Of a stretch of 64,000 bases of DNA, positions 10,410-61,771 are shown in pieces; the first letter of the stretch is position 1, and each line of letters starts with the position of its first letter. The DNA lies in IMG/VR virus record IMGVR_UViG_3300033153_015063, positions 178,597 through 242,596 of that record, one strand, 5' to 3'. The position numbers were made by a program, and so were the translations under genes. Under the pieces are notes generated by a model, which did not search any database, was not told the origin of the DNA, and worked only from the letters and a program-made list of their open reading frames with translations.

Positions 10410-10450
10410 CTTTATATAGTTTCATGGTTTTGAACCGTAAAAAGCGTAAA
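10410..10450 (-). promoter_or_regulatory. conserved promoter cassette, copy A (TTTACGCTTTTTACGGTT-N-TGAAACTATATAAAG)
   Basis: Motif recurs 7 times in intergenic DNA; contains a BRE/TATA-like element upstream of an RBS and start codon. Confidence 0.8.
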
Positions 10451-10534
10451 AGGATTGTTAGTTAGATGACCCGGACCTTGCGGCGAAGTGCTCGTAAGGT
10501 TCTCACTCCGTTCCATTTCCTGATGAGATATTTG

Positions 10535-11878
10535 TTAGAAATCAAAAACCCCCCCCGTCATACTGGGTTTACCATTCTTATTATCTGTAGAAACCCTTTT
10601 TTGTATCTCTTCAATCCTATCATCACTACTCTGTATTGAGAAATCATCTATCTCACCATACAGGTAGACACACTCAGTGTCTGTCAAGTCAGCGTAGTAT
10701 TTTAACAGTCTAACCATCTCGATGTCACCACGACAACATCTTACGAACAAGTTACCTGTATGCCGTAGGAACTCACGCCTATTTACCCTTGTCAAGCCCA
10801 CCTTTGTCAGCTTCCCTCGTATCCCACTCAACATCTTTGCTTCTTTCTCGTTGTATGGGAACCTGGTTTTCCACGTCCCGGGGTGTTTGATGTTCACGTG
10901 ACCTTTGATGGGATAGGGAGGTGTGACCGCAGTCAGAATTTTTTTTACCCACTTCCATGGCCGATAGTTGGTGTGCCTGACCTGTGAGAGTATGACATCG
11001 GCCATGGCAATTATTTCTGCCATATCATACCGTGCAAAACCATCGAAGCCATCTGTAATAGTCTCCAGTAAGAATAAGGTTAAAAGACCTGGGTCCTCCC
11101 GGTTCTCTACTGGCTTACCATAGATGATACCAGAGGTGACGGCAAATATGTCTGGGAAATAATCCTGACTGTCGATTTTCCCTTCTATTCCATTATGAAA
11201 AAGGTAGAGGGCATTGATGGCCGACCTGTAGTTTCCTCCCTTCTTCGATATCTCAATAAGCTTCTCATCTGATATTTTTACCTTCTCGGCCTTTACAATT
11301 TTCTTCAGATATGCTTTAATAGAACGATGGTCGGGTGCCCTCATCTTGAAAAATAGTGATTTATCTTTAACACTATCAGGTATCTTCTTGGCATCATTGC
11401 CCGTGATAACGATTGGATGTACTGTATCTTTGACAACACGTTCCAATATTTTCTTTGATTTTACCTTCAGATTATCTGCTTCGTCTATGATGATTACCTT
11501 AAGGTCGGTATCATCTATCGGTTCGTTTATTACAGCCATGTACAACTGTTTCATCTCTTTTTCTCGCCCATATTTACTTATATCGAACTCGATTGTTTTG
11601 ATACCATAGGTCTGCCCAAGAGTATGTGCAAATGTAGTTTTCCCGATGCCGTTCCTTCCAGTTAACACCACCGCCTTTTCCTTCGGAATACCCCGGAACC
11701 ATCTATCCATGAAATTGGCCAGGGCATCTTTGATATTTTTATATCCTTGAACATCCATCAGGTTCTTTGGTCGATACTTTTCATCCCAATTATCAGGGTC
11801 CGGTTCTGGTTCTGGCTTGGTCTCTACGGTGATGAAAAAATCGTCATCATCGTCTTCCGGCGTCACTATAGGATTCAT
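10535..11878 (-). CDS. rfcL: replication factor C large subunit
   Basis: WDEKYRPKNLMDV, Walker A GRNGIGKT, Walker B IIIDEADNL, C-terminal VFDF tail. Confidence 0.85.
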   Translation of the reverse strand: MNPIVTPEDDDDDFFITVETKPEPEPDPDNWDEKYRPKNLMDVQGYKNIKDALANFMDRWFRGIPKEKAVVLTGRNGIGKTTFAHTLGQTYGIKTIEFDISKYGREKEMKQLYMAVINEPIDDTDLKVIIIDEADNLKVKSKKILERVVKDTVHPIVITGNDAKKIPDSVKDKSLFFKMRAPDHRSIKAYLKKIVKAEKVKISDEKLIEISKKGGNYRSAINALYLFHNGIEGKIDSQDYFPDIFAVTSGIIYGKPVENREDPGLLTLFLLETITDGFDGFARYDMAEIIAMADVILSQVRHTNYRPWKWVKKILTAVTPPYPIKGHVNIKHPGTWKTRFPYNEKEAKMLSGIRGKLTKVGLTRVNRREFLRHTGNLFVRCCRGDIEMVRLLKYYADLTDTECVYLYGEIDDFSIQSSDDRIEEIQKRVSTDNKNGKPSMTGGVFDF

Positions 11879-11890
11879 GTTATCGCCTAC

Positions 11891-12124
11891 TCACTCTATC
11901 AATATTTTTCTTACTTCTTTAGATACAACTATTAACCCTTTACATTTCCTGAAGTTGTTGTACTCATTGCACAGTATTGGTCTCTCGAAGTCCCAACCAC
12001 TTTCATACTCATGTCCACATCTCTGGCACTTGTGTAGATAGACGGTCTTTTCAGAATACCCCCGTTCTCTGTCAATTTGTTTCTGCTTCTCTTTTTTCTC
12101 AAGCAGCTTTTTAAAATCAACCAC
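11891..12124 (-). CDS. small zinc-ribbon protein
   Basis: CQRCGHE...C motif; operon context. Confidence 0.5.
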   Translation of the reverse strand: MVDFKKLLEKKEKQKQIDRERGYSEKTVYLHKCQRCGHEYESGWDFERPILCNEYNNFRKCKGLIVVSKEVRKILIE

Positions 12125-12150
12125 TCATCTCACTCCTTTTATTACCTAAG

Positions 12151-12621
12151 TTAGAATCCATTACCCGTCTCATTGATTGTCAAAGTATTGTTGGATGACA
12201 TGGGCTTGACCTCCTCTACAAAATTTTCGTCTTGGATATCCCTGGTCCCGACCAACTTCATCTCTTTTCCGCACTCCTCACAAAGAGTTTCGGCCCCTAC
12301 TAAACCCCGTCCATAATATGCTTTGCACTCTGGACACCATGCGTCTTGGTCGTTGATGGGATGATATGTCAGGCGTCGTGGTTTTCCTTCTATCTCTGTT
12401 ATGATTTTATCGAAAACAACTTCGTAGTCAGAACCTTCTCCTTTGACACAGATGCTCTCGCCTCCTTTTTTCACTACAATATAAATGCGGTGTTTTTTGG
12501 TGTCTGAGACGTTATTACCAACGGAAGTAGATAGTGTGTACTCGTTCATGGCAACGATCCCGTAGCCATGTTCACGTAGTGCTTTGATGAAATCTTCAAA
12601 CTTCATTCCACTTCCTCCCAT
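12151..12621 (-). CDS. hypothetical protein with zinc ribbon
   Basis: CPEC...CEECG. Confidence 0.55.
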   Translation of the reverse strand: MGGSGMKFEDFIKALREHGYGIVAMNEYTLSTSVGNNVSDTKKHRIYIVVKKGGESICVKGEGSDYEVVFDKIITEIEGKPRRLTYHPINDQDAWCPECKAYYGRGLVGAETLCEECGKEMKLVGTRDIQDENFVEEVKPMSSNNTLTINETGNGF

Positions 12622-13010: not shown

Positions 13011-13012
13011 CC

Positions 13013-13492: not shown

Positions 13493-13509
13493 TCACCATC
13501 GTAATTGTT

Positions 13510-14121: not shown

Positions 14122-14122
14122 C

Positions 14123-14314
14123 TTAATCCTCCATTAATACTTTGAATTGCGGGTTTTCTTTCAGGTAATCTTTGGTATCCTGGAGCCATCCACAACTCCG
14201 GCAGGATAGGAGAGGGAAATAAACCTTCCGGTAACCTTTATTCTTTACCACTCTATTTTCTGGAAGAGCGGTTTTTTCACCACATCCAGGACACTCCACA
14301 GCTAATATTATCAT
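14123..14314 (-). CDS. 63-aa zinc-ribbon protein lying between the two PolB halves
   Basis: CPGCG...CRSCG; ATGA overlap with the upstream stop. Confidence 0.6.
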   Translation of the reverse strand: MIILAVECPGCGEKTALPENRVVKNKGYRKVYFPLLSCRSCGWLQDTKDYLKENPQFKVLMED

Positions 14315-16350
14315 TTTTTGAACACCAACCTACCACCATATTTTTTCTTTATTCCTTCACCACTTTTTTTGACCGAGAAGAATAGCCGTTTGTATATCTT
14401 CTCGAAACCAATACGGAACCGATGTTTTCCAGGGCTTATGTTCAACATCTCAGCGAACTCATCATATGTGGTGTTGAGATATTCGGCAATTTCATATCCC
14501 ATCGAAATTAATTCATCCAGTGTCATATCAGATTTGGCTGGGTCAGTCACGAACAAGCTGTCCGTGTCAGCATATAGCACATTATAACCAAGAGATTCAA
14601 TTTTCTCGGCAGAGTAATTTATGATTGATCTACCTACACTGGTAGTTGCTTCACCACAACGTACGTCCATAAGACGAAATCCGATGAAGCCCAATACTCC
14701 ATAAAATGCATTTGTAAGTGTCTTGAAAGAGAACTGCATCAACTCATATGTATTATAGAGGTCCGTACCAGGAACATTTTCATCTCTGGCATTTTTGTAG
14801 ACCTTTCGCTTCTCAATCATCTCAATAAGGATTGTAGGTATGATACCTTCCTTATCCTTACGAAACATATGGCCTGATGGTGTAGTTATATAGTCATCTG
14901 GTAATGGTTCACCATCAGATATGATAGTGGTTGGGTCGATGTCACATCCTATGATGATGTTGGGATAGAGTGAGTTCAGGTCGACCACCACCACGTTTTC
15001 ATGTAAACCAACAGGTGGTTCGAATACAGTTGCACCTTTGAATTTCTCTTCTCGTTCTTCTCCTCTGACTTGTGTTGGTAGTATCATTTTATTCCACAAT
15101 TTGTGGAAGATGTAGCTATCCAGTAGTTTTGAATTGTAAAAACATTCTTCGATGTCTGTACCTGCTGTGTTGACCACAGCCATATGATAGAACAGGACAT
15201 TCATTTTATCGTTGATTGCTTTCGTAAGTGCCACGTCTATAACATTGTATGCTGCAATGAGCTCACGGTCCCCCTCAAAATACTCCCATCCAAAACCATT
15301 TGGAAACGTCGACAACTTACCAGCTTTCAATTCACTGTTGGCGACAAAGTCGAGTTTTGAACTCTCAGGTAATCCTTTCAATAGTTTTTTCCAGCCACCC
15401 ATCGTGTCGAGGATAGGGATTCCAACGATGGGTCGCCTACCACCTCTGGCGTCGATACGACCAATTTCAGACAGCCGGGCTGGATTTACTCGCATTTCTT
15501 TCATCCGGCCCATGATTACAGGGATATCAAAACCATCAACCCACCATCCGCCGATAATATCGGTCTCCAGTTTATGTAGCATCTTCGGAATGGTCTGAAG
15601 CATACCAACCTCATCGACAGATTGAAAGTATCTGAGTGCCTGGTTATCGTGATGACCATGTGTGTTTATGATACGCACAACATCATTTTTAAGATACTCA
15701 TTCATATCTGGATTGCTTTCCAGATAATCTTTTATGTGTGCAACTACCTTATCATGGTCGATTTCGAGTTGATGGAGTAAATAGTACCTATCATGCTTCG
15801 GGGAATAAAATGAGACACAAAGGAACTCGCCTACTGGGTTTTCTCGGCTTGAGAATCCCTGTCTGTCATCAACCTCGATGTCGATGATAACGTAGTTTGG
15901 TTTGATTTCGGGCCTTTTTTCGTTTTCCCTGAGTGGAACAATCTCATCCTGGTGTATCTCATCACGATCTGGAATCCTGATAAATTCTTTGATGCCGAGA
16001 TCATAGCGACATTTGTCAGTGTAAATTACATCAGCCTGATAGGTCTTTGAGAAGAACTTACGGAGTTGACCCACGTCTCGTGGTAGTCTGGTTTCGATCT
16101 TCCAGGGATAACATCCGTCGATGGCTGGAACAGTTGAACGGGACACCTTGACGACACGTTCCAGATACTCATCAGAGAAATTGGGTTTCTCCGGTGTGTA
16201 GAAGTGGGGAGTTGTGCCCCTGACTCTGATGATACGACGCTTGTTGTCCTCATCACGTCCAAAAAGGATAAGAACCAACCCATCTTTATCCTCGGAGTAG
16301 GTAAGTGAGAATACGAAGAGTGAAATATATCGTTCCTTTGTCATCAACAA
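14311..16350 (-). CDS. polB: family B DNA polymerase, N-terminal subunit (exonuclease plus palm/fingers)
   Basis: ExoI DIEV, ExoII FDIP, ExoIII YNVID; motif A DLNSLYPNII, motif B KTLTNAFYG, motif C YADTDS; ends just after KKKYGG. Confidence 0.95.
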   Translation of the reverse strand: MLMTKERYISLFVFSLTYSEDKDGLVLILFGRDEDNKRRIIRVRGTTPHFYTPEKPNFSDEYLERVVKVSRSTVPAIDGCYPWKIETRLPRDVGQLRKFFSKTYQADVIYTDKCRYDLGIKEFIRIPDRDEIHQDEIVPLRENEKRPEIKPNYVIIDIEVDDRQGFSSRENPVGEFLCVSFYSPKHDRYYLLHQLEIDHDKVVAHIKDYLESNPDMNEYLKNDVVRIINTHGHHDNQALRYFQSVDEVGMLQTIPKMLHKLETDIIGGWWVDGFDIPVIMGRMKEMRVNPARLSEIGRIDARGGRRPIVGIPILDTMGGWKKLLKGLPESSKLDFVANSELKAGKLSTFPNGFGWEYFEGDRELIAAYNVIDVALTKAINDKMNVLFYHMAVVNTAGTDIEECFYNSKLLDSYIFHKLWNKMILPTQVRGEEREEKFKGATVFEPPVGLHENVVVVDLNSLYPNIIIGCDIDPTTIISDGEPLPDDYITTPSGHMFRKDKEGIIPTILIEMIEKRKVYKNARDENVPGTDLYNTYELMQFSFKTLTNAFYGVLGFIGFRLMDVRCGEATTSVGRSIINYSAEKIESLGYNVLYADTDSLFVTDPAKSDMTLDELISMGYEIAEYLNTTYDEFAEMLNISPGKHRFRIGFEKIYKRLFFSVKKSGEGIKKKYGGRLVFKK

Positions 16351-19704: not shown

Positions 19705-21717
19705 CTATCCGACCCGGGCCATGATGGTCCGTTGGATGAGTTTCAGGAACTCGGTAGGCAGGTCTTCGGTATTCTCGATACTGATGCTTCTCTTGTAGTA
19801 CTGCTTGACAGGGCTACCGTCGATGCCGATCCCAATGATGTTATCATTGGCGTACGAGCTCAGAACAGAGTGAAGGATACTTGAAGCGTCCATACTCTCG
19901 CCTTTCCACGAAGAACCCTGTGATGGCATCCCATCAGAGGTAACCAACAGGAACTTTTCTTGTTCTGGTCTGTTGTTGAGGCGGGTCATGGCGTAGTGGA
20001 TGGAAGCACCATCGTTGTTCATACAGCCCCCCGGGTCATCGACCACCTTGAACTTTCTACGTTCGTATTCGGCGTCGAATGGTTTGGGGACCCAGGTCTG
20101 AACAGTGTCACCGGCTGCCCCGAACATCTGAACCTCGAACGGGATGCCGAGTTGGTTCAGGACCTCACAGAAGAGTAGTACCGCCTCGCAAGCTTTGTTT
20201 GTCTTGTTACTACCCCACGACCCCATCGACCCCGACCGGTCCACGATGACGCTGAAAACAACATCGAGTGCTTTTCCGCCCTTCCGCTGCTTGAAGATGC
20301 GGTTGTTGAAGGTCAACGCCTTGATGAGACGCTTTCCGTTCAGTTTACCCCGGGTCTGACCACCGACCATCTTTTTACGGGACCTCTTTGCCGCTTCGAT
20401 GATGTTCTGGAGTTTGCGGGATGTCAGATTAACAAGCGGAGCGACCTTTTTTAACAGGTGCCAGTATCGTTCTGGTCTGTCGATACATTCGTGACTGACC
20501 CATTTTGTTGTACCATCTGCTATGGAAAGATTCGTGCAATCTTTTTTGGTATCTTGATCCTGCTTCCTGTCCTTTTTCTCTCTATCCACCTCTTCGTTGA
20601 TTTCTGGGAGCTCATCAGAAATATCAGATTCCAACTTTTCCTTTTTCTTCTCCATCATCTCGGTCAAGATCTCTTCGTCAGACTTTTTTCCATCCCCATC
20701 CTGCTTTTCTTTCTCGTCTTTCTTATCACCATCTTTACCAGAACCACCATCTTTCTCATCGGCGTCTTTGCCGCTTTCCTTACTGGAGCTGCCCCCCTCA
20801 TCTTCCCCCTCTCCTTTCTTTTTGTTATGAGTACCACCTTTCCCCTCTTTCCCTTCCTTATCCCGGGCTTTTTCAATTGCGTTATCTCGGGCCTGTTCGA
20901 CGGTTGTGGTGATATCAACGTCCTCGCCTTCACTGTCCCCAGGCTGCATCTGGGTAACAAAATCGGGCATATCGGTCTTTTCAGCCCGGTCTTCGGCGGA
21001 TTTCATCTTCTTTTCGATGATAGCCGCTGCTTCAATGACCTTCCAGAGACACGCCTTCGTGTTTAGCGTCATAGCCGCCTCTTGCATGATGCCAAGTGTA
21101 TCAGCATACAGCTTTTTGGCTGCGTCATTGCTGAACGGGGGCGGTTCACGATGGATGATGACCTTGATAGCCAGGGCGGCAATGAGTTGTTTCATGTAGT
21201 CTCCGCCAAGGGTAGACTCATTGGCCCATTGCCGCCGGTAGATACGCTCATGGTCAAGATAGAAATCCTCGGCTATCCCTGGAAGGCTAGTTGCCATACA
21301 GTTGTTGATTCTGTCGTCTTCGGAGATGTTCAGCAGATCCTTGACGAGAGTGAGTGCCTTCACGTTCTCGTTGTTCTGCTTGTTCCATTTGTTGACTACC
21401 TCTTTCATGCCTTTTTCCTTTACTACAGTGAAATCCGAGAATTTCACGTGGCCCACTTCATGGTAGTTGTCGGCCTTCTGTGTTGCCAGGACGTCCAATG
21501 GATCTGAGTATTCAACCCATGATCGTTCACAGATAGCAATGGTGTTGCCATCAGTATGTGACGACCCACTATCCCAGTGGTATTTGATGGCCCTGCCGGC
21601 GAGAATGTTACCGGTCTTACGGAGTCTGGTCAACCGCACGGTCTTTCCCGATGCCGATGGCAACCTCTTTGAGAACCATGCAGCTGGGAACTTTTCTGCT
21701 TGGACATGTTCTGCCAT
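19705..21717 (-). CDS. CobT/NorD-like vWA-domain protein (MoxR partner)
   Basis: N-terminal HEVGH, charged linker, C-terminal MIDAS DRSGSM...TSDG. Confidence 0.85.
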   Translation of the reverse strand: MAEHVQAEKFPAAWFSKRLPSASGKTVRLTRLRKTGNILAGRAIKYHWDSGSSHTDGNTIAICERSWVEYSDPLDVLATQKADNYHEVGHVKFSDFTVVKEKGMKEVVNKWNKQNNENVKALTLVKDLLNISEDDRINNCMATSLPGIAEDFYLDHERIYRRQWANESTLGGDYMKQLIAALAIKVIIHREPPPFSNDAAKKLYADTLGIMQEAAMTLNTKACLWKVIEAAAIIEKKMKSAEDRAEKTDMPDFVTQMQPGDSEGEDVDITTTVEQARDNAIEKARDKEGKEGKGGTHNKKKGEGEDEGGSSSKESGKDADEKDGGSGKDGDKKDEKEKQDGDGKKSDEEILTEMMEKKKEKLESDISDELPEINEEVDREKKDRKQDQDTKKDCTNLSIADGTTKWVSHECIDRPERYWHLLKKVAPLVNLTSRKLQNIIEAAKRSRKKMVGGQTRGKLNGKRLIKALTFNNRIFKQRKGGKALDVVFSVIVDRSGSMGSWGSNKTNKACEAVLLFCEVLNQLGIPFEVQMFGAAGDTVQTWVPKPFDAEYERRKFKVVDDPGGCMNNDGASIHYAMTRLNNRPEQEKFLLVTSDGMPSQGSSWKGESMDASSILHSVLSSYANDNIIGIGIDGSPVKQYYKRSISIENTEDLPTEFLKLIQRTIMARVG

Positions 21718-21735
21718 GATACTTACCTGACCTCT

Positions 21736-21779
21736 GGTCTTTATATACTTTCAGCTTGTTTAACTGTAAAAAGCGTAAA
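21736..21779 (-). promoter_or_regulatory. conserved promoter cassette, copy B
   Basis: Plus-strand GGTCTTTATATACTTTCAGCTTGTTTAACTGTAAAAAGCGTAAA; near-identical to copy F in the opposite orientation. Confidence 0.8.
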
Positions 21780-21899: not shown

Positions 21900-23669
21900 T
21901 TACGAGGCGGAGATTGTGATTTCTTCCCACTCATAGGGTCCATAGTCACCATTATTACATGCCTGACCGTTGTCCATGTTGTAGGCAGGCCAGAAGTGGA
22001 AATTTCCATCATCACCATTCCCAACTCCGAAATCCCACTGGTCCACCGGGTCATTCTGGCCAAACTGTCCAACCCATTTACCAGCGTGTCCTTCCCATTC
22101 CAATCCTGCATTGATGTCGTCGTTGTAGTTGTCATCATGTAGGAGCGAAATTGTAAACGTTCCTTGTGGTACAAGGATTAGAACACCACACCCCGGATGA
22201 CAGTCTCCCATACGGTCATAACCGAGCGTGTAGTCGATGTTATCGGTGTCGCCATCACGAATACCAACAAATATTTCTCGAAACTCAATGTTGTTGGTAG
22301 CATGAGTATTTTTGTACTGGAAATAAAGATGCCATATGTAGTCATCGTTATTTACTGTCGGGTCTTTGTGAACGTCCATATACCATGCGTTCAGTCGGAC
22401 GTTATAGTTTCCATCAGACGTTCCTGACATCAGATGGCGACGATATGGCACTTTGCTACCATATTCATAATCAATATCATCATTGATATTATTGGTGTTA
22501 GCAGACGAATACTTCCACCACTTATCACTATCTGAATCTGGGAGTTGGCTACGCATAAAACTGTATTTAGTGTTCCATTCCATACACCAGATTAAGAACC
22601 ATCTAACACAGTAGGTGTTGGAAGTAGCATCATCGTGGCTTCCTTCATAGGCATGGCCGAACTCGTGAAGAGCCACGAAATTTATATCATTGTTCGACCC
22701 AGAGTGCTTGACCCATATATACCTTATTCCACCATGACACCCCAAGTGGTTGTCAAACGTATATTTAGTTGTCGATGAGGTGAAATAAATGAGGAGGTCA
22801 AAATATTCGTAGCTAGGAACTTGGTATTCAATAAATAGGTTATCCATCAAAGTACCTGGGTCTCCACTACAATCAGCATCCCCGTTCAGGTCGTCATTGT
22901 CCTCTACATCTCTGGTTTCCTCGATGATGAGAAACATCTTGTCCAGGCCATGGTCTCCATCATCGAGCTCGGAGTTCATCACATTGATATGATGGACAAC
23001 GCTACCCACCGTAGAATCGTCATAAAGCAGTACAACCCGATGAAGCTTGAAAGGCGTCTGGATGGACTCAGCAGACTTGCCACCGGTCTCATTTTTCTCA
23101 CTGGTGGGTGTGATGGTCTCAACCACCTCGTTCTGAACTTTTTTCTCTTTGGCAATCTCCATTGACGATAGTTTCTCAGGGGCGTTGGAATAGCTCAAGT
23201 AGGTGTTGGGGTAATCCTTCTCCAGTTGCTCACTCTTGCCCCAGTACTGGGCCGGTAAGATGTAGTAATCATATTCCTTGTAGTTGAACGATACCTCGAT
23301 GCATACCTCACCCATTGCATAGGTGATGACAGCAGAACTTCCGTCGTAACCATCGACTACTCCATGCCATGCCAACACAGGATAGCCTGCAAGGTCGCTG
23401 TCGGCAATGTATTGCCTCGTCAAGATGATGTCTGCGGGCTTTCCATCAAGATTCACTTCCAGTTTCCCGGTTCGGTCCATCCGGTCTGCGAGCTTCACCG
23501 GGTCCAGTTCCTTCAGCTCGAAGGACTCGATCTCAGCCTCTTCAGGCAGATACGATGCTACCTCGGTCATGTCAGATGACAAGTCATCTGACGCTGTCAC
23601 ATCTCCTATTACCAAGGTTTGGCATAGGAACAAAACCACTACAAATCCAACTACCATTTTCGAACTCAT
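21900..23669 (-). CDS. secreted zinc metalloprotease (metzincin/reprolysin-like)
   Basis: N-terminal hydrophobic signal (VVGFVVVLFLCQTLV), propeptide-like region, HEFGHAYEGSH zinc motif, downstream SFM Met-turn. Confidence 0.75.
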   Translation of the reverse strand: MSSKMVVGFVVVLFLCQTLVIGDVTASDDLSSDMTEVASYLPEEAEIESFELKELDPVKLADRMDRTGKLEVNLDGKPADIILTRQYIADSDLAGYPVLAWHGVVDGYDGSSAVITYAMGEVCIEVSFNYKEYDYYILPAQYWGKSEQLEKDYPNTYLSYSNAPEKLSSMEIAKEKKVQNEVVETITPTSEKNETGGKSAESIQTPFKLHRVVLLYDDSTVGSVVHHINVMNSELDDGDHGLDKMFLIIEETRDVEDNDDLNGDADCSGDPGTLMDNLFIEYQVPSYEYFDLLIYFTSSTTKYTFDNHLGCHGGIRYIWVKHSGSNNDINFVALHEFGHAYEGSHDDATSNTYCVRWFLIWCMEWNTKYSFMRSQLPDSDSDKWWKYSSANTNNINDDIDYEYGSKVPYRRHLMSGTSDGNYNVRLNAWYMDVHKDPTVNNDDYIWHLYFQYKNTHATNNIEFREIFVGIRDGDTDNIDYTLGYDRMGDCHPGCGVLILVPQGTFTISLLHDDNYNDDINAGLEWEGHAGKWVGQFGQNDPVDQWDFGVGNGDDGNFHFWPAYNMDNGQACNNGDYGPYEWEEITISAS

Positions 23670-23813: not shown

Positions 23814-23872
23814 GGTCTTTATATACTTTCATGCTGAGTTGCTGAGTACTGAGTAACCGTAAAAAGTGTAAC
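23814..23872 (-). promoter_or_regulatory. conserved promoter cassette, copy C (spacer expanded by CTGAGT repeats)
   Basis: Same TATA and upstream boxes, separated by three CTGAGT units; only a 19-codon ORF follows. Confidence 0.65.
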
Positions 23873-25089: not shown

Positions 25090-26499
25090 TCAGAAATTGG
25101 TGTTAAAAACGTCCAGGATCGCTTTCTTATCATCTTCACGGAATAAATGATGGGTTGTAAAACTGTAGGCGGTGTGAACATCAAAATCGAGGCAGGCCTC
25201 GGCCCACATGATAAGGTGTCGGGTTGTGATGGTTGACCGAATGTCACTATCCCAGTTTTTGTATGCCGTGCGGATATCCTTGGCAAATCTCATCATGGCT
25301 GGATAGACAACATTGTGTTCGTCCTGGAAACCAGAGTAGTGCTTGACACACTCGATTTCATCGTCCTTTTCCAGATAGTCCATCTCCATGATGACACCGA
25401 AGCGGTCTTTGTCAGCAAAGTTGAGCTCGTGTGTTCCGCTATGTTCTCCGGTGTGGGATGGGTTCATTGTTGCGAAGAACCTGAAGTTCTGGTGAGCTCT
25501 GATTACATCATGTCCTTGTTGGGCCAGGGTGATGGAACGGGCTCCATCAAGGAGAGAACGAAGGATGAACAGGACTGTGTCCTCAGCTGCATTGATTTCG
25601 TCGAACGTAATCCAGTGCCCGAGCTTCATAGCGACGACGAGGGCACCATCGACCCATTTTGTCACAGGATTTCCACTCTCACCTTCGTCCAGGATGAATT
25701 GCCCCAGGATTTCATCTGGGGAAGTATGGCCGGACAGGTTGATACGCCAGTAGGGGATCTTTTCCATCCCAGCCAGATGCTCTATGGCCACAGATTTTCC
25801 ACAACCGGGGGGACCGACGAGAAGGGTGTTTTTGTTCTTCTTGACACCCCATCTGACGGCCCCGAGGATAGTTACGTCGATGTCAGGTAGACCATCGACC
25901 TTCAGATCCTGGTCGTAGTACTTGTCGATGGTCGGAACCATTTCAGAGAAATCTCTGAACACAACCTCCTCACCCTTCTTTTGTTCCTTCTGTGGTTTGT
26001 GAGTGGTTGTACTCTGTTGTCCGTCCTGTATCTGGAGGAGCTGCCCGAACAGGTCGGGGTCCGTGTCTTTCATCTGCACGATGAACTTTACCTTCTCCTC
26101 GAAGGGGAGTGAGCTGTAGGTGTCGAAGATGTACTTTGCCTGGGTCACTGTTGCGGACTTTCCAGGGACCCCTACGACCCCGGTACCTGCGGTATCGGCC
26201 AGTATCTCAACGGGATGCCATCCCATCGCCTTTACCAACCCCTTCGTCATGGTCCGGCTGTCTCGGAGGTCCCGGATGTTGTAGGTTCCTCCGTTTACGA
26301 GGGGGACCTCGCTTTTTACAGCAATACGAAGGCTACCTCGATAACCATTGAACCACACTATGGTATGGTTCCCGCCACGCTCCATGACCACGTCGGTCCC
26401 TTCTGGGGGGAGTTCGATTCCATCAAACTCGGAGGTCCAGTCGACCTCCTTGGATGCTCTGTCCGAACCAAGTGTTTGTGAGTTATTTTCACTCATCAT
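25090..26499 (-). CDS. MoxR/CobS/CbbQ-type AAA+ ATPase
   Basis: GPPGCGKS, ITFDEIN, FFATMNP and DRF motifs. Confidence 0.9.
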   Translation of the reverse strand: MMSENNSQTLGSDRASKEVDWTSEFDGIELPPEGTDVVMERGGNHTIVWFNGYRGSLRIAVKSEVPLVNGGTYNIRDLRDSRTMTKGLVKAMGWHPVEILADTAGTGVVGVPGKSATVTQAKYIFDTYSSLPFEEKVKFIVQMKDTDPDLFGQLLQIQDGQQSTTTHKPQKEQKKGEEVVFRDFSEMVPTIDKYYDQDLKVDGLPDIDVTILGAVRWGVKKNKNTLLVGPPGCGKSVAIEHLAGMEKIPYWRINLSGHTSPDEILGQFILDEGESGNPVTKWVDGALVVAMKLGHWITFDEINAAEDTVLFILRSLLDGARSITLAQQGHDVIRAHQNFRFFATMNPSHTGEHSGTHELNFADKDRFGVIMEMDYLEKDDEIECVKHYSGFQDEHNVVYPAMMRFAKDIRTAYKNWDSDIRSTITTRHLIMWAEACLDFDVHTAYSFTTHHLFREDDKKAILDVFNTNF

Positions 26500-26529
26500 A
26501 CATCACTACCACTTACTCCCAGATTCAGC

Positions 26530-26570
26530 CTTTATATAGTTTCACATTGATTAACCGTAAAAAGCGTAAA
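26530..26570 (-). promoter_or_regulatory. conserved promoter cassette, copy D
   Basis: Plus-strand CTTTATATAGTTTCA...AACCGTAAAAAGCGTAAA upstream of the MoxR gene. Confidence 0.8.
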
Positions 26571-29309: not shown

Positions 29310-29462
29310 TCATAATCCTCAGTGAAACGCAAAGCCTTCGGGACGGATAAGGTCGTGTAGTTGCGGTTGCATTTTTCTATCAATTATAATCCTCAGTGAA
29401 ACAGGTTGAGGTTAAAATTTCCGGTACATGGTACTACTGTTGCATTTTCTATCAATTATAAT
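29292..29462 (-). CRISPR. CRISPR mini-array: 3 repeats, 2 spacers, no adjacent cas genes
   Basis: Full 37-nt repeat at 29366..29402 (plus: GTTGCATTTTTCTATCAATTATAATCCTCAGTGAAAC); 31/37-match copy at 29292..29328; truncated copy at 29439..29462; unique spacers of 37 and 36 nt; AT-rich leader-like DNA on the right. Confidence 0.75.
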
Positions 29463-34037: not shown

Positions 34038-35051
34038 TTAGATGAAGTTTTCGAGTTCGGCCTTTGGGCACTCTGGTGAAATATATTTCATAACACCAAA
34101 CCACCCGATAAGACAACGTAGTTGAATACGTTCGGACCTTCCGTTGGTCATACGGTTGTCGATGTCGCCTATCTTAGCCATCAACCTACCGTAATCCTGA
34201 CGACTCATCTCCATAGAGTCGATGATATTGGCCATCATCTCCAGTATCTCTGAGCCAGAGTAACCATATTGATAAATCATCTCATCAATAGTTGCACAAG
34301 CTCTCTGGAATTTCCCCTCGAAAGCCTCTTTCAGACACCTCTCGACCAGTTCCTGGTCCACCCAACCAATGAGATATCTGGCTTCATCTATAGTGACCTT
34401 CCCTTCGATATAGGAGAGCTCCTGCAAGGCGTTGACAGCTATCCTGGCGTCGCCCTTTGCAGCATCAGCGATATAGTCTTTGACCTTATTTGGGAGACGC
34501 ATATCCTCACCCTTGTCGATGGTGTCAATTATTTTCAGGATGTTCGCTTTCGATAGAACTGTGAAGCGAAATATAGCACATCGTGACTGGATCGGTTCGA
34601 TGAGTTTGTTTGACCAATTACATCCAAGGATAAAACGACATGAGTCAGAATGAATTTCCATCGTTCGACGAAGGGCAGCCTGAGCATCTTTGGTCAACTC
34701 ATCTGCTTCATCGAGGAATAGAACTTTGAAGGATGAAGGTCCATAAGGCACAGTCGAGGCAAAATCCTGTATCGGCCCCCTGACAGTATCAATACCCCGA
34801 CTATCAGAAGCATTCATTTCCTTGAAGTTTTTATCAACAAACTCGTCTCCGAACAATTCATTGGCTAAAGCGATGGCCATCGTGGTTTTGCCGATACCCT
34901 GGGCCCCTGTGAATAGAAGATGAGGTAGGTTGCGATTCTTGATTAACCTTTTCAATCTGGCAATCTTATGTTCGTGACCGATAACCTCGTCCAGAGTCTC
35001 TGGGCGGTACTTCTCCAGAAAGAGTATCTGTTCGATGTCCTCGTAATCCAT
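34038..35051 (-). CDS. rfcS: replication factor C small subunit
   Basis: EKYRP, PHLLFTGAQGIGKT, EMNASDSRGID, DEADELTKDAQAALRRTME and IQSRCA. Confidence 0.95.
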   Translation of the reverse strand: MDYEDIEQILFLEKYRPETLDEVIGHEHKIARLKRLIKNRNLPHLLFTGAQGIGKTTMAIALANELFGDEFVDKNFKEMNASDSRGIDTVRGPIQDFASTVPYGPSSFKVLFLDEADELTKDAQAALRRTMEIHSDSCRFILGCNWSNKLIEPIQSRCAIFRFTVLSKANILKIIDTIDKGEDMRLPNKVKDYIADAAKGDARIAVNALQELSYIEGKVTIDEARYLIGWVDQELVERCLKEAFEGKFQRACATIDEMIYQYGYSGSEILEMMANIIDSMEMSRQDYGRLMAKIGDIDNRMTNGRSERIQLRCLIGWFGVMKYISPECPKAELENFI

Positions 35052-40642: not shown

Positions 40643-40825
40643 CTATAAATGTTTTAAATTCTTTAAATATCCTCTATTTTGATAATCACTCAAATGATAT
40701 ATCAATTCATCTTTTGAGTACATGGTAGCTGGAAAAGGGATATTATGAGTTATTTTCAACCTCTTCCCCAGCTTAACCAACTCTGCTTTTGTCATTCTCT
40801 CCAAATTATATTCCATATTGTTCAC
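40643..40825 (-). CDS. small helix-extension-helix (Rho-N/LEM-like) protein
   Basis: LERMTKAELVKLGKRLKI...SKDELI. Confidence 0.4.
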   Translation of the reverse strand: MNNMEYNLERMTKAELVKLGKRLKITHNIPFPATMYSKDELIYHLSDYQNRGYLKNLKHL

Positions 40826-41094
40826 TCCCTGGCTTCATCTTTGCTATCCATGATTACGTGTTGACCACAGGTCCCACAGTGCCCATCAGCACCACAGTCG
40901 TTGACGGTACCCAGCATGAACCTACAGGGATTACCACACTCCTGACCACAGGTAGGGCAGATCCCGGTGAGTTGGAAATCCTGTTTGGCATTCCACTCTA
41001 CGTCGATGATAAAATCATCATGGTCCATCTGTTGATGTCGGGCATCGTCGGATCGCCATGTATGGTCGTATTCAGAAGTTTGAGTTGCCATCAT
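40822..41094 (-). CDS. small zinc-binding hypothetical protein under promoter cassette E
   Basis: CPTCG and CGTCG; GGTGA RBS. Confidence 0.6.
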   Translation of the reverse strand: MMATQTSEYDHTWRSDDARHQQMDHDDFIIDVEWNAKQDFQLTGICPTCGQECGNPCRFMLGTVNDCGADGHCGTCGQHVIMDSKDEARE

Positions 41095-41125
41095 ACATCA
41101 CCTGTTGCCTCTTACTAACAATCAG

Positions 41126-41167
41126 CCTTTATATACTTTCAGGGAAATCAACCGTAAAAAGCGTAAA
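41126..41167 (-). promoter_or_regulatory. conserved promoter cassette, copy E
   Basis: Plus-strand CCTTTATATACTTTCAGGGAAATCAACCGTAAAAAGCGTAAA. Confidence 0.8.
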
Positions 41168-47781: not shown

Positions 47782-47926
47782 TGGACTTGAGGGGTCTCGA
47801 ACCCCCATCTACCTATCGGGCATAATTACACACAGGTGTGCTAGCTGAGGTAAGAACAATGCCGAGCTGAAGAAGTTATGTTCTCATGTCCTTCAAGGCC
47901 GTTTTTTCCCATTAAACTACAAGCCC
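47782..47926 (-). tRNA. tRNA-like gene with ~70 nt of insertion in the anticodon region; anticodon unresolved
   Basis: Acceptor GGGCTTG/CAAGTCC plus discriminator A; T8A9; D arm GTTT-AATGGGAAA-AAAC; T arm GGGGG-TTCGAGA-CCCCT; 145 nt in total. Confidence 0.65.
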
Positions 47927-50181: not shown

Positions 50182-50211
50182 CTCTGTTTTCTATCGTCCC
50201 ACTCTACCGGT

Positions 50212-53734: not shown

Positions 53735-54266
53735 CTTTTAACACCTCGATAACTTCATTTAGATTGTAGTAATAAATCTCTGAATCGGTAAGGTCATCAA
53801 GGTCTATCTCACGGTGTTTTGCGAGATAATCTCTGACTATAACAGCACGTTTAATTTTACCATGTTCTGTCCAGAACCCGTCTGGCCAGTCCAGATGTTT
53901 GTCTGTGACCTGTTGAGTTATTCTGATGACCTGACCTGTCCAGTTCCTGGGCCATGGTTCTAATTTTCCTGGCACCGGAACTGAACGGAGTAACAGAGGG
54001 AACGTGACCCTGGCGTATAGTGACGGTTTGTGAAAGTATATAATAACCAGTGGAGACGAGAGATGATACTCTGCAAAGAAGGACCTTGTGAACTCCCACT
54101 CCTTAATCTGATAATCTTTGAGTCCTAGTATGTTGTACATCAGGTGCTTCAACAACCTGGTAGAGTTATAGATGCCGATATTTTTTGGTGTCCACGTCCC
54201 TCGTCGTAGTTTACCCCCTTCTCCTCGGAGTATCTTTTCATACTTCTCGATGAGACGGGACTTCAT
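53727..54266 (-). CDS. hypothetical protein
   Basis: First gene of the replication operon; TATA upstream. Confidence 0.55.
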   Translation of the reverse strand: MKSRLIEKYEKILRGEGGKLRRGTWTPKNIGIYNSTRLLKHLMYNILGLKDYQIKEWEFTRSFFAEYHLSSPLVIIYFHKPSLYARVTFPLLLRSVPVPGKLEPWPRNWTGQVIRITQQVTDKHLDWPDGFWTEHGKIKRAVIVRDYLAKHREIDLDDLTDSEIYYYNLNEVIEVLKDV

Positions 54267-54317
54267 AATGACTCTGAAAAACGTTGATGAGTTTATAAAG
54301 ATTTAGCTAATACACCA

Positions 54318-54361
54318 GTTACGCTTTTTACAGTTAAACAAGCTGAAAGTATATAAAGACC
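54318..54361 (+). promoter_or_regulatory. conserved promoter cassette, copy F
   Basis: TTACGCTTTTTACAGTTAAACAAGCTGAAAGTATATAAAGACC. Confidence 0.8.
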
Positions 54362-54376
54362 AATAGAAAGCTAGTA

Positions 54377-54712
54377 GTGGTGATGTATGTGGTTACAGGA
54401 GATGATATCCTTGACGCTATGCTGAACGGGACTGATGCTGAGTTCGCCGGGGTCCTTGAGAACTACTGGCACGAACTGGCCGTTGAGATGAAAGACAACG
54501 AGTATCTCCGAAAGAGAGAGCTCTTCGACCAGGTGTCCAACCCCGAGAACTGGAAACTCCCGACCCGACCGGTGGAGTTCGATACCCTGGATGAAGCTGA
54601 TGAGATGCTGTCTGCTATCACCCATTTTGTGGGTGGTGCTGAGATGTTGGGTCTCCCATCAGGGAAAATTGCTGTATGGTCGAAGGGTTACTATCATCAC
54701 ATCGGTGCGTAG
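54377..54712 (+). CDS. conserved phage hypothetical protein
   Basis: LFDQVSNPENWKLP...AITHFVGG...KGYYHHIGA; directly behind cassette F. Confidence 0.65.
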   Translation: MVMYVVTGDDILDAMLNGTDAEFAGVLENYWHELAVEMKDNEYLRKRELFDQVSNPENWKLPTRPVEFDTLDEADEMLSAITHFVGGAEMLGLPSGKIAVWSKGYYHHIGA

Positions 54713-57001: not shown

Positions 57002-57012
57002 GAAGTAGTAGT

Positions 57013-57186: not shown

Positions 57187-57187
57187 T

Positions 57188-57616: not shown

Positions 57617-57690
57617 AATGGAGATACAAATAGGTAGATTCTTCACGATTCTTTCTCTACGAATTAAGATGAAAAATAGTTGGTGACGAT

Positions 57691-60948: not shown

Positions 60949-60951
60949 TTT

Positions 60952-61032
60952 TTAATCTCCGAACCAGATGTACCACAGGGCATAGAGACCAACCACTACA
61001 CCAATCACGTAAAGCCATATTGGGATATCCAT
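60952..61032 (-). CDS. 26-aa single-pass membrane peptide, missed by the ORF track
   Basis: MDIPIWLYVIGVVVGLYALWYIWFGD; TATA-like ATAATATA about 21 nt upstream. Confidence 0.5.
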   Translation of the reverse strand: MDIPIWLYVIGVVVGLYALWYIWFGD

Positions 61033-61069
61033 AACAGGCAATCCCGAATGTGGTATATTATGTTTACTG

Positions 61070-61675
61070 CTAGTAATCCATGTGGAGTTCCATTGCTATA
61101 ACCCTTTTTTCCACGGGCTTTCTCCCAAGACCTTTGATGTCGCCCCAGAACAACTCACTCACACCACGCCATATCTGGTAATCCTCTTTGGGGTAGTATG
61201 CATCTCGGCTGAGAGGATTATATTCTTCACGTTCGGCACCCCAGAACTCATATTCGTGGAGATTGGTCAGTGCTTTGAACTCGCTATTGGTCATTTTCTT
61301 CGGGACCCATACCCACTTGTGGACCTTCTCACAGCCCATTTTCCCCTTATCCGCTATAAACTTCATCTCTCGTTTCTCATAGGGACCAATACTCCACCTG
61401 TCTCTGAAGGCTTCAACATATTTTGCTGTATGTTTACCTTCGGTGGACGTATCATCAAAAGGGGCGACGAATACGAATACTTCATCCTCTATCGGTTCCC
61501 TGACCATCTCCCGCCCCTCAAACTCTCCCCTCGATGCCACCTTCATCCTCTCCAGGAACTCCTCCTCCGTCAACTGAGGGCTATCCCCGACCGGCCCCTT
61601 GTAAACCGTAGCTCCCTCTTCATATTCATAGCGGTATCTATTCCCTGAACCCTCAGGTATCTCTACAGTGGTCAT
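61070..61675 (-). CDS. shared-leader family member 9
   Basis: MTTVEIPEGSGNRYRYEYEEGATVYKGPVGDSPQLTEEEFLERM; ATG at 61675 lies 23 nt after TTTATATA. Confidence 0.85.
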   Translation of the reverse strand: MTTVEIPEGSGNRYRYEYEEGATVYKGPVGDSPQLTEEEFLERMKVASRGEFEGREMVREPIEDEVFVFVAPFDDTSTEGKHTAKYVEAFRDRWSIGPYEKREMKFIADKGKMGCEKVHKWVWVPKKMTNSEFKALTNLHEYEFWGAEREEYNPLSRDAYYPKEDYQIWRGVSELFWGDIKGLGRKPVEKRVIAMELHMDY

Positions 61676-61726
61676 CAAGGAATACAATGGGTGTTGAGTA
61701 TATAAAGAGTTCTAACCTCCCCTCCC

Positions 61727-61771
61727 TTTTACGCTTTTTACGGTTGTTTGGCCTGAAAGTATATAAAGACC
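61727..61771 (+). promoter_or_regulatory. conserved promoter cassette, copy G
   Basis: TTTACGCTTTTTACGGTTGTTTGGCCTGAAAGTATATAAAGACC. Confidence 0.8.

What the first reader, a model, noticed from the sequence alone, without database searches (positions are those of the whole stretch)
10410..61771. Seven-copy ~42-bp promoter cassette defines a regulon that includes both the MoxR and vWA genes
Seen: TT(T)ACGCTTTTTAC[GA]GTT-N8/9-TGAAA[GC]TATATAAAG at 10410, 21736, 23814, 26530 and 41126 (minus) and 54318 and 61727 (plus), always oriented towards a downstream RBS and start codon. The upstream box holds a 9-bp-period TTTACG direct repeat. The targets include the vWA and MoxR partners and isolated plus-strand genes, several with visibly GC-richer codon usage. 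Established: repeated early-promoter cassettes mediate modular shuffling in T4-type phages. Inference: a binding site for an activator that drives immediate-early genes, and a second recombination handle.
Basis: partly seen in the sequence, partly recalled or inferred. Interest (0 to 1): 0.6.

Follow-up and report, generated by a model that had tools for sequence, protein, structure and literature searches.

The report
Archaeal-type promoter cassette, genome-wide class
The repeated 42-bp motif is real, but it is one of about 27 copies of an archaeal-style promoter (TFB site and TATA box, with an extra upstream box) spread over a 242-kb archaeal virus-like genome, not a seven-gene MoxR/vWA regulon of a T4-type phage.

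Summary
All seven copies lie at the stated places (0.2 expected by chance). One copy (23817-23871) has a 23-nt spacer, not 8/9.

The window is the last 64 kb of a 242,596-bp circularly assembled virus record. That genome carries 37 upstream boxes and 27 full cassettes.

The host is almost certainly archaeal:
- tRNA genes carry short anticodon-loop introns, one with a canonical bulge-helix-bulge fold.
- The RFC small subunit is a true archaeal type (E 1e-79; 44-48% identity to methanogen-lineage proteins).
- No sigma factor or RNA polymerase was found.
- Intrinsic terminators are not enriched.

About 50 further TATA-like boxes (CTTTWWAWA) lie exactly 21-25 nt before start codons that lack a Shine-Dalgarno sequence. 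The cassette's TATATAAA shows the same spacing.

I read the cassette as an archaeal core promoter: a purine-rich BRE plus TATA, an upstream direct-repeat box at about -61..-45, and a proximal GTAAGAG element. Together they define one co-regulated class of mostly orphan genes.

Whether the class is activated or repressed, and when it is expressed, is untested; no RNA data were available.

The closest known cases are the halovirus HF2 intergenic promoter repeats and the SIRV2 early-gene regulatory consensus.

The parts
10373..10449 (-). Cassette copy 1: upstream box 10433-10449, 8-nt spacer, BRE/TATA box 10410-10424, leader with AGGTGAT running up to the GTG start at 10370-10372
21718..21778 (-). 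Cassette copy 2 (vWA gene): upstream box 21762-21778, BRE/TATA 21739-21753, GTAAG element, ATG 22 nt after TATATAAA (leaderless-type spacing)
23817..23871 (-). Cassette copy 3, aberrant: upstream box (ACAC variant) 23855-23871, 23-nt spacer with ACTCAG repeats, BRE/TATA 23817-23831; next ORF starts about 148 nt further on
26500..26569 (-). Cassette copy 4 (MoxR gene): upstream box 26553-26569, BRE/TATA 26530-26544, GTAAG element, ATG at 26499
41095..41166 (-). Cassette copy 5: upstream box 41150-41166, BRE/TATA 41127-41141, GTAAGAG, AGGTGAT, ATG at 41094
54319..54376 (+). Cassette copy 6: upstream box 54319-54335, BRE/TATA 54344-54358; back-to-back with a minus-strand CTTTATAAA box at 54292-54300
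61729..61802 (+). Cassette copy 7: upstream box 61729-61745, BRE/TATA 61754-61768, GTAAGAG 61781-61787, AGGTGAT, ATG at 61803; back-to-back with a minus-strand CTTTATATA box at 61699-61707
54014..54045 (+). Degenerate partial copy: ACGGTT joined almost directly to TGAAAGTATATAATA, lying inside a minus-strand gene; probably a relic
9743..10372 (-). Target gene, 209 aa, no family; paralogue of a 279-aa gene behind another cassette copy (genome 169753-170592)
19705..21717 (-). Target gene, 670 aa, C-terminal CobT-type vWA domain
   Evidence: PF11775, E 8e-12
21900..23669 (-). Target gene, 589 aa (585 aa in the JGI call), no family
25090..26499 (-). Target gene, 469 aa, MoxR/CobS-like AAA_5 ATPase; two small genes follow on the same strand
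40822..41094 (-). Target gene, 90 aa, no family; shares its first residues (MMATQT) with the 83-aa gene behind the copy at genome 32061
54377..54712 (+). Target gene, 111 aa, no family
61803..62354 (+). Target gene, 183 aa, no family
47782..47926 (-). tRNA gene with a short insertion in the anticodon loop (about 54 nt by ARAGORN, 72 extra nt by Rfam); evidence that the host is archaeal, so TBP/TFB-type promoters are expected
34038..35051 (-). Archaeal-type replication factor C small subunit, behind a CTTTTTAAA box 22 nt before its ATG; evidence for the host domain and for the general promoter geometry

Best explanation
The cassette is one class of archaeal-type promoter in a 242-kb virus-like genome that is transcribed by an archaeal host's RNA polymerase with TBP and TFB. 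YRAAAS acts as the TFB-recognition element (BRE) and TATATAAA as the TATA box. Transcription would start about 19-25 nt after the TATA box. In roughly ten copies that places the start at or just before an ATG with no Shine-Dalgarno sequence (leaderless mRNA). In roughly thirteen copies it places it at or just before a short leader that begins with AGGTGAT. Two further conserved blocks mark this class. One is a 17-nt upstream box with two direct YTTTTACGS units at about -61..-45. The other is a GTAAGAG element at about -10..-4. These are most likely bound by a sequence-specific factor, viral or host, that switches the 27 units (37 if every upstream box is counted) on or off together. MoxR and vWA are only two of the genes involved. 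Shown: the copy number, placement, orientation, spacing and archaeal context. Inferred: promoter activity, the start site, factor binding and timing.
For: (1) Real, and not chance. (2) Placement: 31 of 37 boxes are non-coding (P about 1e-21), each oriented towards the next gene. (3) Geometry: there are 122 CTTTWWAWA boxes in the genome. Of these, 48 have an ORF-opening ATG 21-25 nt downstream (36 at 22-23), and the reversed-pattern control is flat (list). The cassette's TATATAAA has ATGs at 20-23 nt in about 10 copies without a Shine-Dalgarno sequence. Fragments of related viruses (L024-L026) show the same TATA-to-ATG spacing, including before their RFC-S genes. (4) Archaeal context. tRNA genes carry short anticodon-loop introns, and the tRNA-Met intron folds into a 3-4-3 bulge-helix-bulge. 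RFC-S matches A. fulgidus and P. furiosus RFC-S at E 1e-79 and 4e-76, against 1e-18 for T4 gp44. Its best named cellular relatives are Methanomassiliicoccales, Methanocella and Methanoperedens at 44-48% identity. PolB's best matches among deposited phages are haloarchaeal tailed viruses. (5) No sigma-70 region 2, multisubunit or T7-type RNA polymerase, TFB or TBP was found by Pfam in the genome; the T7-type (PF00940) search had no positive control, so that blank is uninformative. This fits dependence on the host's transcription machinery. Intrinsic terminators are not enriched, and no cassette is called sigma-70-like. (6) Modularity: the same upstream box is joined to a different TATA box (TTATATAC) at 6 sites, and lies 23-26 nt from the TATA box at 2 sites. 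(7) A third element: GTAAG/GTAAA lies 12-14 nt after TATATAAA in 18 of 27 copies. That compares with 2 of 52 class II promoters with the motif anywhere in the 30 nt after the box (none at 12-14 nt) and 3.8% of random 30-nt windows. (8) About 9-12 boxes lie in divergent intergenic regions with nothing upstream to terminate. (9) Published precedent: the HF2 class I intergenic repeats are experimentally shown promoters with an upstream alpha block, a TATA-bearing beta block and a start-site gamma block.
Against: There are no transcript data. No sequencing run was listed, so the start site and the promoter activity are inferred. The cassette was not found in any other record: IMG/VR gave none, the metagenome scan gave only 2 chance hits in unrelated 27%-GC contigs, and 18 kb of related fragments held none. 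Conservation across species therefore cannot be shown. The genome also carries bacterial-style genes: a class II CCA-adding enzyme, T4-like topoisomerase II and a 5-hmdU DNA kinase. In the copies with a Shine-Dalgarno sequence, AGGTGAT begins right at the start site predicted from the leaderless copies, so the true start may lie a few nt upstream, in the GTAAGAG block. No candidate binding protein was identified. High identity among copies could partly reflect recent duplication or gene conversion rather than selection on every position.
Confidence: 0.7

Rival explanations
1. The upstream box has no factor-binding role. Its two oligo-T runs (T4 and T5) act as an archaeal-style terminator for the gene before it, so the cassette is a terminator-plus-promoter boundary.
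For: In about 25 of 37 sites the box lies 3-90 nt after the stop codon of a gene on the same strand. No hairpin terminators are enriched, so termination here probably uses T-runs.
Against: About 9-12 boxes lie in divergent intergenic regions with no co-directional gene upstream, yet keep the same sequence, for example window 54319 and 61729. The non-T positions (ACGC, ACRGTT) are as invariant as the T-runs. The two roles could coexist.
Confidence: 0.12
2. It is a bacterial sigma-70-type early promoter (-35 TTTACR, 17-nt spacer, -10 TATATA) of a T4-like jumbo phage, akin to the T4-type promoter-early stem-loop cassettes.
For: TTTACA/TTTACG followed 17 nt later by TATATA can be read in the cassette (sequence). 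The genome has T4-like topoisomerase II and a bacterial-type CCA-adding enzyme.
Against: The -10 reading lacks the T at its last position, and the scan called no cassette. There is no stem-loop: fold z-scores are -0.96 to +1.33. Intron-bearing tRNAs and an archaeal RFC-S point to an archaeal host. The 22-23-nt box-to-ATG spacing with no Shine-Dalgarno sequence does not fit a -10 element, where a leaderless ATG would lie about 7 nt away. Intrinsic terminators are not enriched.
Confidence: 0.05
3. Only the BRE/TATA part is functional. The flanking identity is a by-product of recent duplication and gene conversion among promoter copies, with no dedicated regulator.
For: Subsets of copies share identical spacers, leaders and even 20-45 nt of upstream flank, for example genome 15061 with 240327, and 32061 with 49736. 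Some downstream genes are paralogues.
Against: The 8-nt spacer varies freely between two nearly invariant blocks. That is the pattern of selection, not of recent copying. The upstream box also occurs with other TATA boxes and at other distances.
Confidence: 0.1
4. The repeats serve a non-transcriptional role, such as origin iterons or packaging signals.
For: They are repeated, AT-rich and contain direct repeats.
Against: They are dispersed over the whole 242 kb, not clustered. Each is oriented with the next gene and lies at a fixed distance from its start codon.
Confidence: 0.03

Closest known systems
Halovirus HF2 class I intergenic repeats (58 bp; alpha, beta and gamma blocks), PMC8707807
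   Same: Multi-copy intergenic repeats in an archaeal tailed virus that carry the promoter. There is a conserved upstream block (alpha), a TATA-bearing block with the BRE just 5' of it (beta), and a conserved block at the start site (gamma). They are used for early-middle genes and are thought to bind virus-encoded factors, while a second repeat class serves other genes. PolB of the present genome has its best deposited-phage matches in this virus group.
   Different: There is no sequence similarity between the HF2 repeats and this cassette; the HF2 beta motif TCTTTAAGTC looks more like this genome's other box class, CTTTWWAWA. There are 27-37 copies here against 7. The host is not a halophile (median protein pI 5.7). 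Here the upstream block is a tandem direct repeat. Activity is untested here, whereas it was shown for HF2.
Consensus regulatory sequence of SIRV2 and other archaeal-virus early / anti-defence genes, PMC11065993
   Same: A highly conserved stretch with a purine-rich BRE and a TTTAWATA-type TATA box in front of many small, unrelated, unannotated genes. The promoter is far more conserved than the genes, and a viral regulator (Aca8) is proposed to bind it. Here 20 of the 27 genes behind the cassette have no family match, and 10 encode fewer than 150 aa.
   Different: Early timing is not known here. No Aca-like protein or palindromic operator was found; the boxes are direct repeats upstream of the BRE. 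The targets here also include large enzymes: a helicase, MoxR, a vWA protein and a RecT-like protein.
Promoter-early stem-loop cassettes of T4-type phages
   Same: A repeated promoter unit in front of unrelated genes. The mosaic copies suggest recombination at the repeats.
   Different: Those are bacterial sigma-70 promoters followed by a stem-loop. Neither feature is present here, and the host domain differs.
Archaeal upstream activating sites, for example the Ptr2 sites of Methanocaldococcus and the GvpE site of haloarchaea (from my own knowledge, not checked here)
   Same: A factor-binding site just upstream of the BRE that helps recruit TBP or TFB. The position of the box (about -61..-45) fits this.
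   Different: There is no sequence relationship, no binding protein has been identified, and activation is not shown.

Membership tests
Archaeal BRE/TATA core promoter | AT-rich TATA box about 23-31 nt upstream of the transcription start | tested here: inconclusive
   No start-site data exist. As a proxy, ATGs without a Shine-Dalgarno sequence lie 20-23 nt after TATATAAA in about 10 copies. The same 21-25-nt spacing holds for 48 CTTTWWAWA boxes, with a flat control.
Archaeal BRE/TATA core promoter | Purine-rich TFB-recognition element directly 5' of the TATA box | tested here: met
   YRAAAS (mostly TGAAAG or TGAAAC) abuts TATATAAA in all 27 copies.
Archaeal BRE/TATA core promoter | Host uses TBP/TFB-dependent RNA polymerase (archaeal host) | tested here: met
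   tRNA genes with short introns and a bulge-helix-bulge fold. Archaeal RFC-S. No sigma factor or RNA polymerase in the genome. Terminators not enriched. The host itself was not identified.
HF2-type intergenic promoter repeats | Multi-copy intergenic repeat with separate conserved blocks upstream of, at, and downstream of the TATA box | tested here: met
   Upstream box, BRE/TATA and GTAAGAG blocks are separated by variable positions; 31 of 37 are non-coding.
HF2-type intergenic promoter repeats | Sequence homology to the HF2 alpha, beta and gamma motifs | tested here: not met
   The motifs quoted (TCTTTAAGTC, CGTCTNNTAGAG, CTAAAGACTTAGAA) are not in the cassette consensus. The relationship is by architecture only.
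HF2-type intergenic promoter repeats | Repeats and their positions conserved in related viruses | tested here: inconclusive
   Only 18 kb of related fragments could be read (L024-L026). They hold no cassette, though about 2-3 would be expected at this genome's density.
HF2-type intergenic promoter repeats | Promoter activity in a reporter and a mapped start site | not testable with these tools
   Needs an experiment.
Early / anti-defence regulatory consensus of archaeal viruses (SIRV2 type) | Expressed immediately after infection | not testable with these tools
   No RNA run was listed.
Early / anti-defence regulatory consensus of archaeal viruses (SIRV2 type) | Precedes mostly small, single genes with no annotation | tested here: inconclusive
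   20 of 27 targets have no family match and 10 of 27 encode fewer than 150 aa, but the targets also include enzymes of 437-670 aa.
T4-type promoter-early stem-loop cassette / sigma-70 promoter | Sigma-70 -35/-10 hexamers with A at position 2 and T at position 6 of the -10 | tested here: not met
   No cassette is among the sites called in window 1-40000, and TATATA/TATAAA lacks the final T.
T4-type promoter-early stem-loop cassette / sigma-70 promoter | Conserved stem-loop after the promoter | tested here: not met
   Fold z-scores of the seven window copies are -0.96 to +1.33.

The most novel reading that the evidence does not exclude
The cassette marks the immediate-early, largely anti-defence gene set of one of the largest archaeal virus genomes yet seen (242.5 kb). 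It would be controlled by a virus-encoded, Aca-like factor that recognises YTTTTAC units on both sides of the core promoter: two direct units at about -55 and an inverted, one-mismatch unit, GTAAGAG, near the start site. If so, the motif alone would give a ready list of about 27 candidate host-takeover and anti-defence genes in an uncultivated methanogen-lineage virus.
Probability: 0.2. Interest if true: 0.7.

Novelty: new member of a known kind. Interest (0 to 1): 0.5.

Why it matters
Repeated promoter cassettes are among the few handles on gene regulation in uncultivated archaeal viruses. In HF2 they separate temporal classes, and in Sulfolobales viruses the same idea led to new anti-defence genes. 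Here the cassette sorts the 27 units that carry the full cassette (37 sites if every upstream box is counted), mostly orphan genes, into one co-regulated class. The genome is larger than the 228-kb 'jumbo' archaeal virus reported in a 2025 preprint. The cassette also gives exact sequences for reporter, pull-down and in-vitro transcription tests. In addition, the analysis corrects the frame: this window is not a T4-type bacteriophage, so bacterial promoter rules should not be used to read it.

Tried and rejected
- DNA search of 8 kb of the window against deposited phages: no match.
- Cassette pattern in IMG/VR: none.
- Cassette pattern in JGI metagenomes: two hits in 27%-GC contigs with no similarity to this genome, taken as chance.
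- Sequencing runs: none was listed. Read laying was therefore not used and no start sites could be read.
- PolB as a single query in IMG/VR: no close relatives.
- RFC-S as a single query in GTDB genomes: none.
- An alignment of viral RFC-S proteins in IMG/VR: only distant relatives at 27-42% identity, among them a 103,257-bp record that is probably a haloarchaeal tailed virus.
- Host search with the mini-CRISPR repeat: absent from GTDB genomes, and only chance 18-mers in IMG/VR.
- Haloarchaeal host: rejected, because the proteome is not acidic (median pI 5.7).
- Own-genome Pfam searches for sigma-70 r2/r4, the RNA polymerase beta subunit, T7-type polymerase, TFIIB, TBP, PCNA, terminase and HK97 capsid: none above cut-off. 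There were two weak r4-like hits (E 0.02-0.07). The T7 model had no positive control.
- PHROGs and Pfam on the largest proteins: no RNA polymerase and no virion hallmark; only PKD, fn3 and TSP3 repeat proteins in the 63-101 kb region.
- The paper search for the JGI sample identifiers found nothing.
- Eukaryotic giant virus: considered because RFC-S also resembles eukaryotic and Nucleocytoviricota proteins. Set aside because of the Shine-Dalgarno-type leaders, DNA methylases, mini-CRISPR arrays and overlapping gene packing.
- The jumbo circular elements of Methanoperedens (PMC13444090) differ: they have Orc1, many host-like metabolic genes and 38-42% GC.
- The large exhaustive protein search, structure prediction and complex prediction were not used.


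Full report
**Observation.** Both boxes occur seven times in the window at the stated places.
- The upstream box ACGCTTTTTACRGTT gave 7 matches against 0.20 expected, and no shuffle out of 100 reached 7.
- The downstream box TGAAASTATATAAAG gave the same 7 places without mismatch, plus a weak eighth at 54031-54045.
- The alignment shows two nearly invariant blocks separated by a variable 8-nt spacer.
- The exception is the copy at 23817-23871. Its spacer is 23 nt, through an insertion of ACTCAG-like repeats.
- The 9-bp direct repeat in the upstream box (TTTTACGC, TTTTTACGG) is there.

**Scale.** The window is bases 178597-242596 of a 242,596-bp virus record, JGI 3300033153, contig Ga0366824_1000500. 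Its 'terminal repeat' is only 64 bp, so it reads as a circular or circularly permuted assembly.
- The whole genome has 37 upstream boxes with up to 2 mismatches.
- 27 are followed by TATATAAA: 26 at the standard spacing and one at +15 nt.
- 6 are followed by a different TATA-like box, TTATATAC or similar.
- 4 have a weak, displaced or no box.
- 31 of the 37 lie in the 13.6% of the genome that my crude ORF set leaves non-coding (P about 1e-21). Each points at the next gene.

So the seven copies are the window's share of a genome-wide class. They are not a regulon built around MoxR and vWA. Both of those genes are indeed behind a copy (AAA_5 and CobT_C domains).

**What kind of genome this is.** No deposited phage matches at the DNA level. 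Several independent features point to an archaeal host.
- *tRNA introns.* Rfam finds a tRNA at window 47782-47926 whose anticodon-loop region is 83 nt instead of 11. Two more such genes lie elsewhere in the genome, and ARAGORN in intron mode agrees. In the tRNA-Met precursor, the anticodon stem, a 3-nt bulge, a 4-bp helix and a second bulge form the bulge-helix-bulge shape that the archaeal splicing endonuclease cuts. Introns of about 25-94 nt are far too short to be bacterial group I introns; that last point is from my own knowledge.
- *Clamp loader.* The 337-aa protein at 34038-35051 is a full-length archaeal RFC small subunit. It matches Archaeoglobus at E 1.6e-79 and Pyrococcus at 4e-76, against 1e-18 for T4 gp44 and 2e-16 for bacterial gamma/tau. 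Its best named cellular relatives, at 44-48% identity, are Methanomassiliicoccales, Methanocella, Methanoperedens and other Euryarchaeota. A second, RFC-large-like protein lies at 10535-11878.
- *DNA polymerase.* PolB (14311-16350) has its best deposited-phage matches in haloarchaeal tailed viruses. Its PDB matches are slightly better to archaeal PolB than to RB69.
- *Transcription proteins.* No sigma-70 region 2 and no multisubunit RNA polymerase were detected; the T7-type (PF00940) search also returned nothing but had no positive control, so that blank is uninformative.
- *Terminators.* Intrinsic terminators are not enriched (13 against 15.7 ± 4.4, and 22 against 17.1 ± 4.2). No cassette meets the sigma-70 criteria.

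Against this, the genome also carries genes typical of bacteriophages: a class II CCA-adding enzyme, T4-like topoisomerase II and a 5-hmdU DNA kinase. The proteome is not acidic, so the host is not a haloarchaeon. The host itself was not identified.

**The general promoter rule of this genome.** The genome holds 122 CTTTWWAWA boxes. Of these, 48 have an ORF-opening ATG 21-25 nt after the box, 36 of them at 22-23 nt. The intervening sequence is pyrimidine-rich and has no Shine-Dalgarno motif. The reversed pattern shows no such peak.

A fixed box-to-ATG distance means that the start codon is set by the transcription start, so the mRNAs are leaderless or nearly so. About 23 nt between an 8-bp TATA box and the start is the archaeal geometry. 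A bacterial -10 element would lie about 7 nt away.

Three fragments of related viruses were recovered through RFC-S relatives at 53-57% identity with the same RFC-S/nuclease gene order. They show the same arrangement, including in front of their own RFC-S genes. In the window this class drives, for example, the RFC-S, thymidylate-synthase-like, PEP-utiliser-domain and N6-methylase genes.

**Anatomy of the cassette in that light.** TATATAAA occupies the same position as the general box.
- In about ten copies an ATG without a Shine-Dalgarno sequence follows at 20-23 nt. The vWA gene is at 22 nt.
- In about thirteen copies the ATG or GTG follows at 31-38 nt, and AGGTGAT begins 22-24 nt after the box.
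- Directly 5' of the TATA box lies YRAAAS, purine-rich as a TFB-recognition element should be.
- Eight variable nt further upstream lies the 17-nt box, at about -61..-45.
- GRCYRA follows the TATA box.
- GTAAG or GTAAA lies 12-14 nt after it in 18 of 27 copies. That compares with 2 of 52 general promoters with the motif anywhere in the 30 nt after the box (none at 12-14 nt) and 3.8% of random windows.
- GTAAGAG is the reverse complement of the box unit CTTTTAC with one change. I rate this as suggestive only.
- The copies have no significant fold.

**Is the upstream box more than a terminator or a relic?**
- Its T-runs could stop archaeal transcription, and in about 25 sites it follows a gene on the same strand.
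- However, about 9-12 boxes lie in divergent regions with nothing to terminate. These include window 54319 and 61729, which stand back-to-back with general boxes at 54292-54300 and 61699-61707.
- The non-T positions are as invariant as the T-runs, while the spacer is free.
- The box also occurs with another TATA type and at another distance.

This modularity favours a separate binding site. Whether it activates or represses is open.

**Targets and timing.**
- Of the 27 genes behind full cassettes, 20 have no family match and 10 encode fewer than 150 aa.
- The rest are a helicase, a DUF6011 protein, two Zn-ribbon proteins, a protein whose nearest deposited-phage match (25% identity) is annotated RecT-like, MoxR and the vWA protein.
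- No full cassette lies between about 50 and 96 kb or between 97 and 117 kb. The large PKD, fn3 and TSP3 repeat proteins, presumably virion or adsorption proteins, lie there. This fits a non-late class but does not prove it.
- Cassette genes have higher GC3.

**Shuffling.** Identical leaders are joined to different spacers and the reverse. Examples are the leader starting ACCAAGATGCGGG with spacers AACCCAGC or GTTTGGCC, and spacer GATTTCCC with two different leaders. In several groups identity ends at the start codon of unrelated genes. No strict four-gamete case was seen.

**Comparison with what is known.**
- The nearest match in architecture is the 58-bp class I intergenic repeat of halovirus HF2. 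It is a shown promoter with an upstream alpha block, a TATA-bearing beta block and a start-site gamma block. It is used for early-middle genes and is thought to bind viral factors. There is no sequence homology to it.
- The second parallel is the conserved BRE/TATA regulatory sequence in front of SIRV2 early and anti-defence genes.
- The T4-type cassette comparison fails on the sigma-70 criteria, on the stem-loop and on host domain.

**Limits.**
- Gene calls are my own crude ORF set.
- No run was listed for the window, so nothing was laid on it.
- No relative carrying the cassette could be found, so there is no cross-species test.
- Whether the element is a virus rests on the IMG/VR record. 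I found no capsid or terminase family.

Noticed in passing
window 29292-29402 (minus); also genome 24.8 kb, 28.1-28.4 kb and 38.4 kb (L010, L011): Mini-CRISPR-like arrays: a 37-nt repeat (GTTTCACTGAGGATTATAATTGATAGAAAAATGCAAC) with unique 34-38-nt spacers, 12 repeats in four arrays. No cas genes were sought. The repeat is absent from the GTDB genomes searched.
   Followed up: partly
window 47782-47926 (minus); L018:3517-3683 and L018:14182-14278: tRNA genes with short anticodon-loop introns; the tRNA-Met intron folds as a bulge-helix-bulge. The 3' end of the window tRNA directly abuts the ATG of the 386-aa gene at 46620-47780, so tRNA processing might create that mRNA's 5' end.
   Followed up: partly
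whole genome, 30 copies; window copies have their YKGP motif near 32898, 35774, 36566, 41621, 42362, 46504, 61603 and 63941 (minus): A 30-member paralogous gene family. The members share an N-terminal module of about 60 aa (MT.VEIPPGSGNRYRYEYE..TVYKGPVG.APEL.EEEFLEMM) followed by unrelated C-termini. Most sit behind near-identical CTTTAAATA or CTTTTTATA promoter-leader units. Function unknown.
   Followed up: no
whole genome; window boxes with 5' ends at 7674, 19677, 28365, 32486, 35082, 35884, 40590, 42472, 46608, 54300, 61707 and 63472 (minus): A second, larger promoter class: CTTTWWAWA boxes (consensus about gAACTCTTTTTAAACTC) 21-25 nt before ATGs without a Shine-Dalgarno sequence, with 52 at 20-28 nt genome-wide. 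The same geometry is seen in related fragments L024-L026.
   Followed up: yes
window 8581-9645, 18662-19645 and 30594-32453 (minus): Genes of the thymidine-hypermodification type in an apparently archaeal virus: a 5-hmdU DNA kinase, a protein with a PEP-utiliser mobile domain, and a 619-aa thymidylate-synthase-like protein. Several N6/N4 DNA methylases are also present (5992-7638, 26617-27444).
   Followed up: no
L015:4902-5062 (genome 112.9-113.04 kb, minus): A tandem array of six 27-bp units (GGCCTACTTGTGAGTATATAAAGCTCT). Each unit holds a cassette-like GAGTATATAAAG box but no upstream box. Purpose unknown.
   Followed up: no
whole record: 242,596 bp with only a 64-bp terminal overlap, so it reads as a circular assembly. 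The signatures are archaeal, yet no capsid, terminase, TBP, TFB or PCNA family was detected. If it is a virus, it exceeds the 228-kb 'jumbo' archaeal virus of a 2025 preprint (10.1101/2025.08.23.671958).
   Followed up: partly
L011:15972-17297 (+), L012:3977-6355 (-), L009:11760-13721 (-): Bacterial or phage-style genes in the same genome: a class II CCA-adding enzyme with an HD domain, and both subunits of a T4-like type II topoisomerase. This is a mixed ancestry worth a phylogeny.
   Followed up: no
L012-L014 (genome about 63-101 kb): A block of large proteins with PKD, fn3 and thrombospondin type 3 repeats (up to 1130 aa), plus proteins of 1490 and 1627 aa with no match. Probably virion or adsorption proteins. 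No full cassette lies in this block.
   Followed up: partly
window 54014-54045 (+): A truncated cassette copy (ACGGTT fused to TGAAAGTATATAATA) inside a minus-strand gene, 290 nt upstream of the intact copy at 54319.
   Followed up: no
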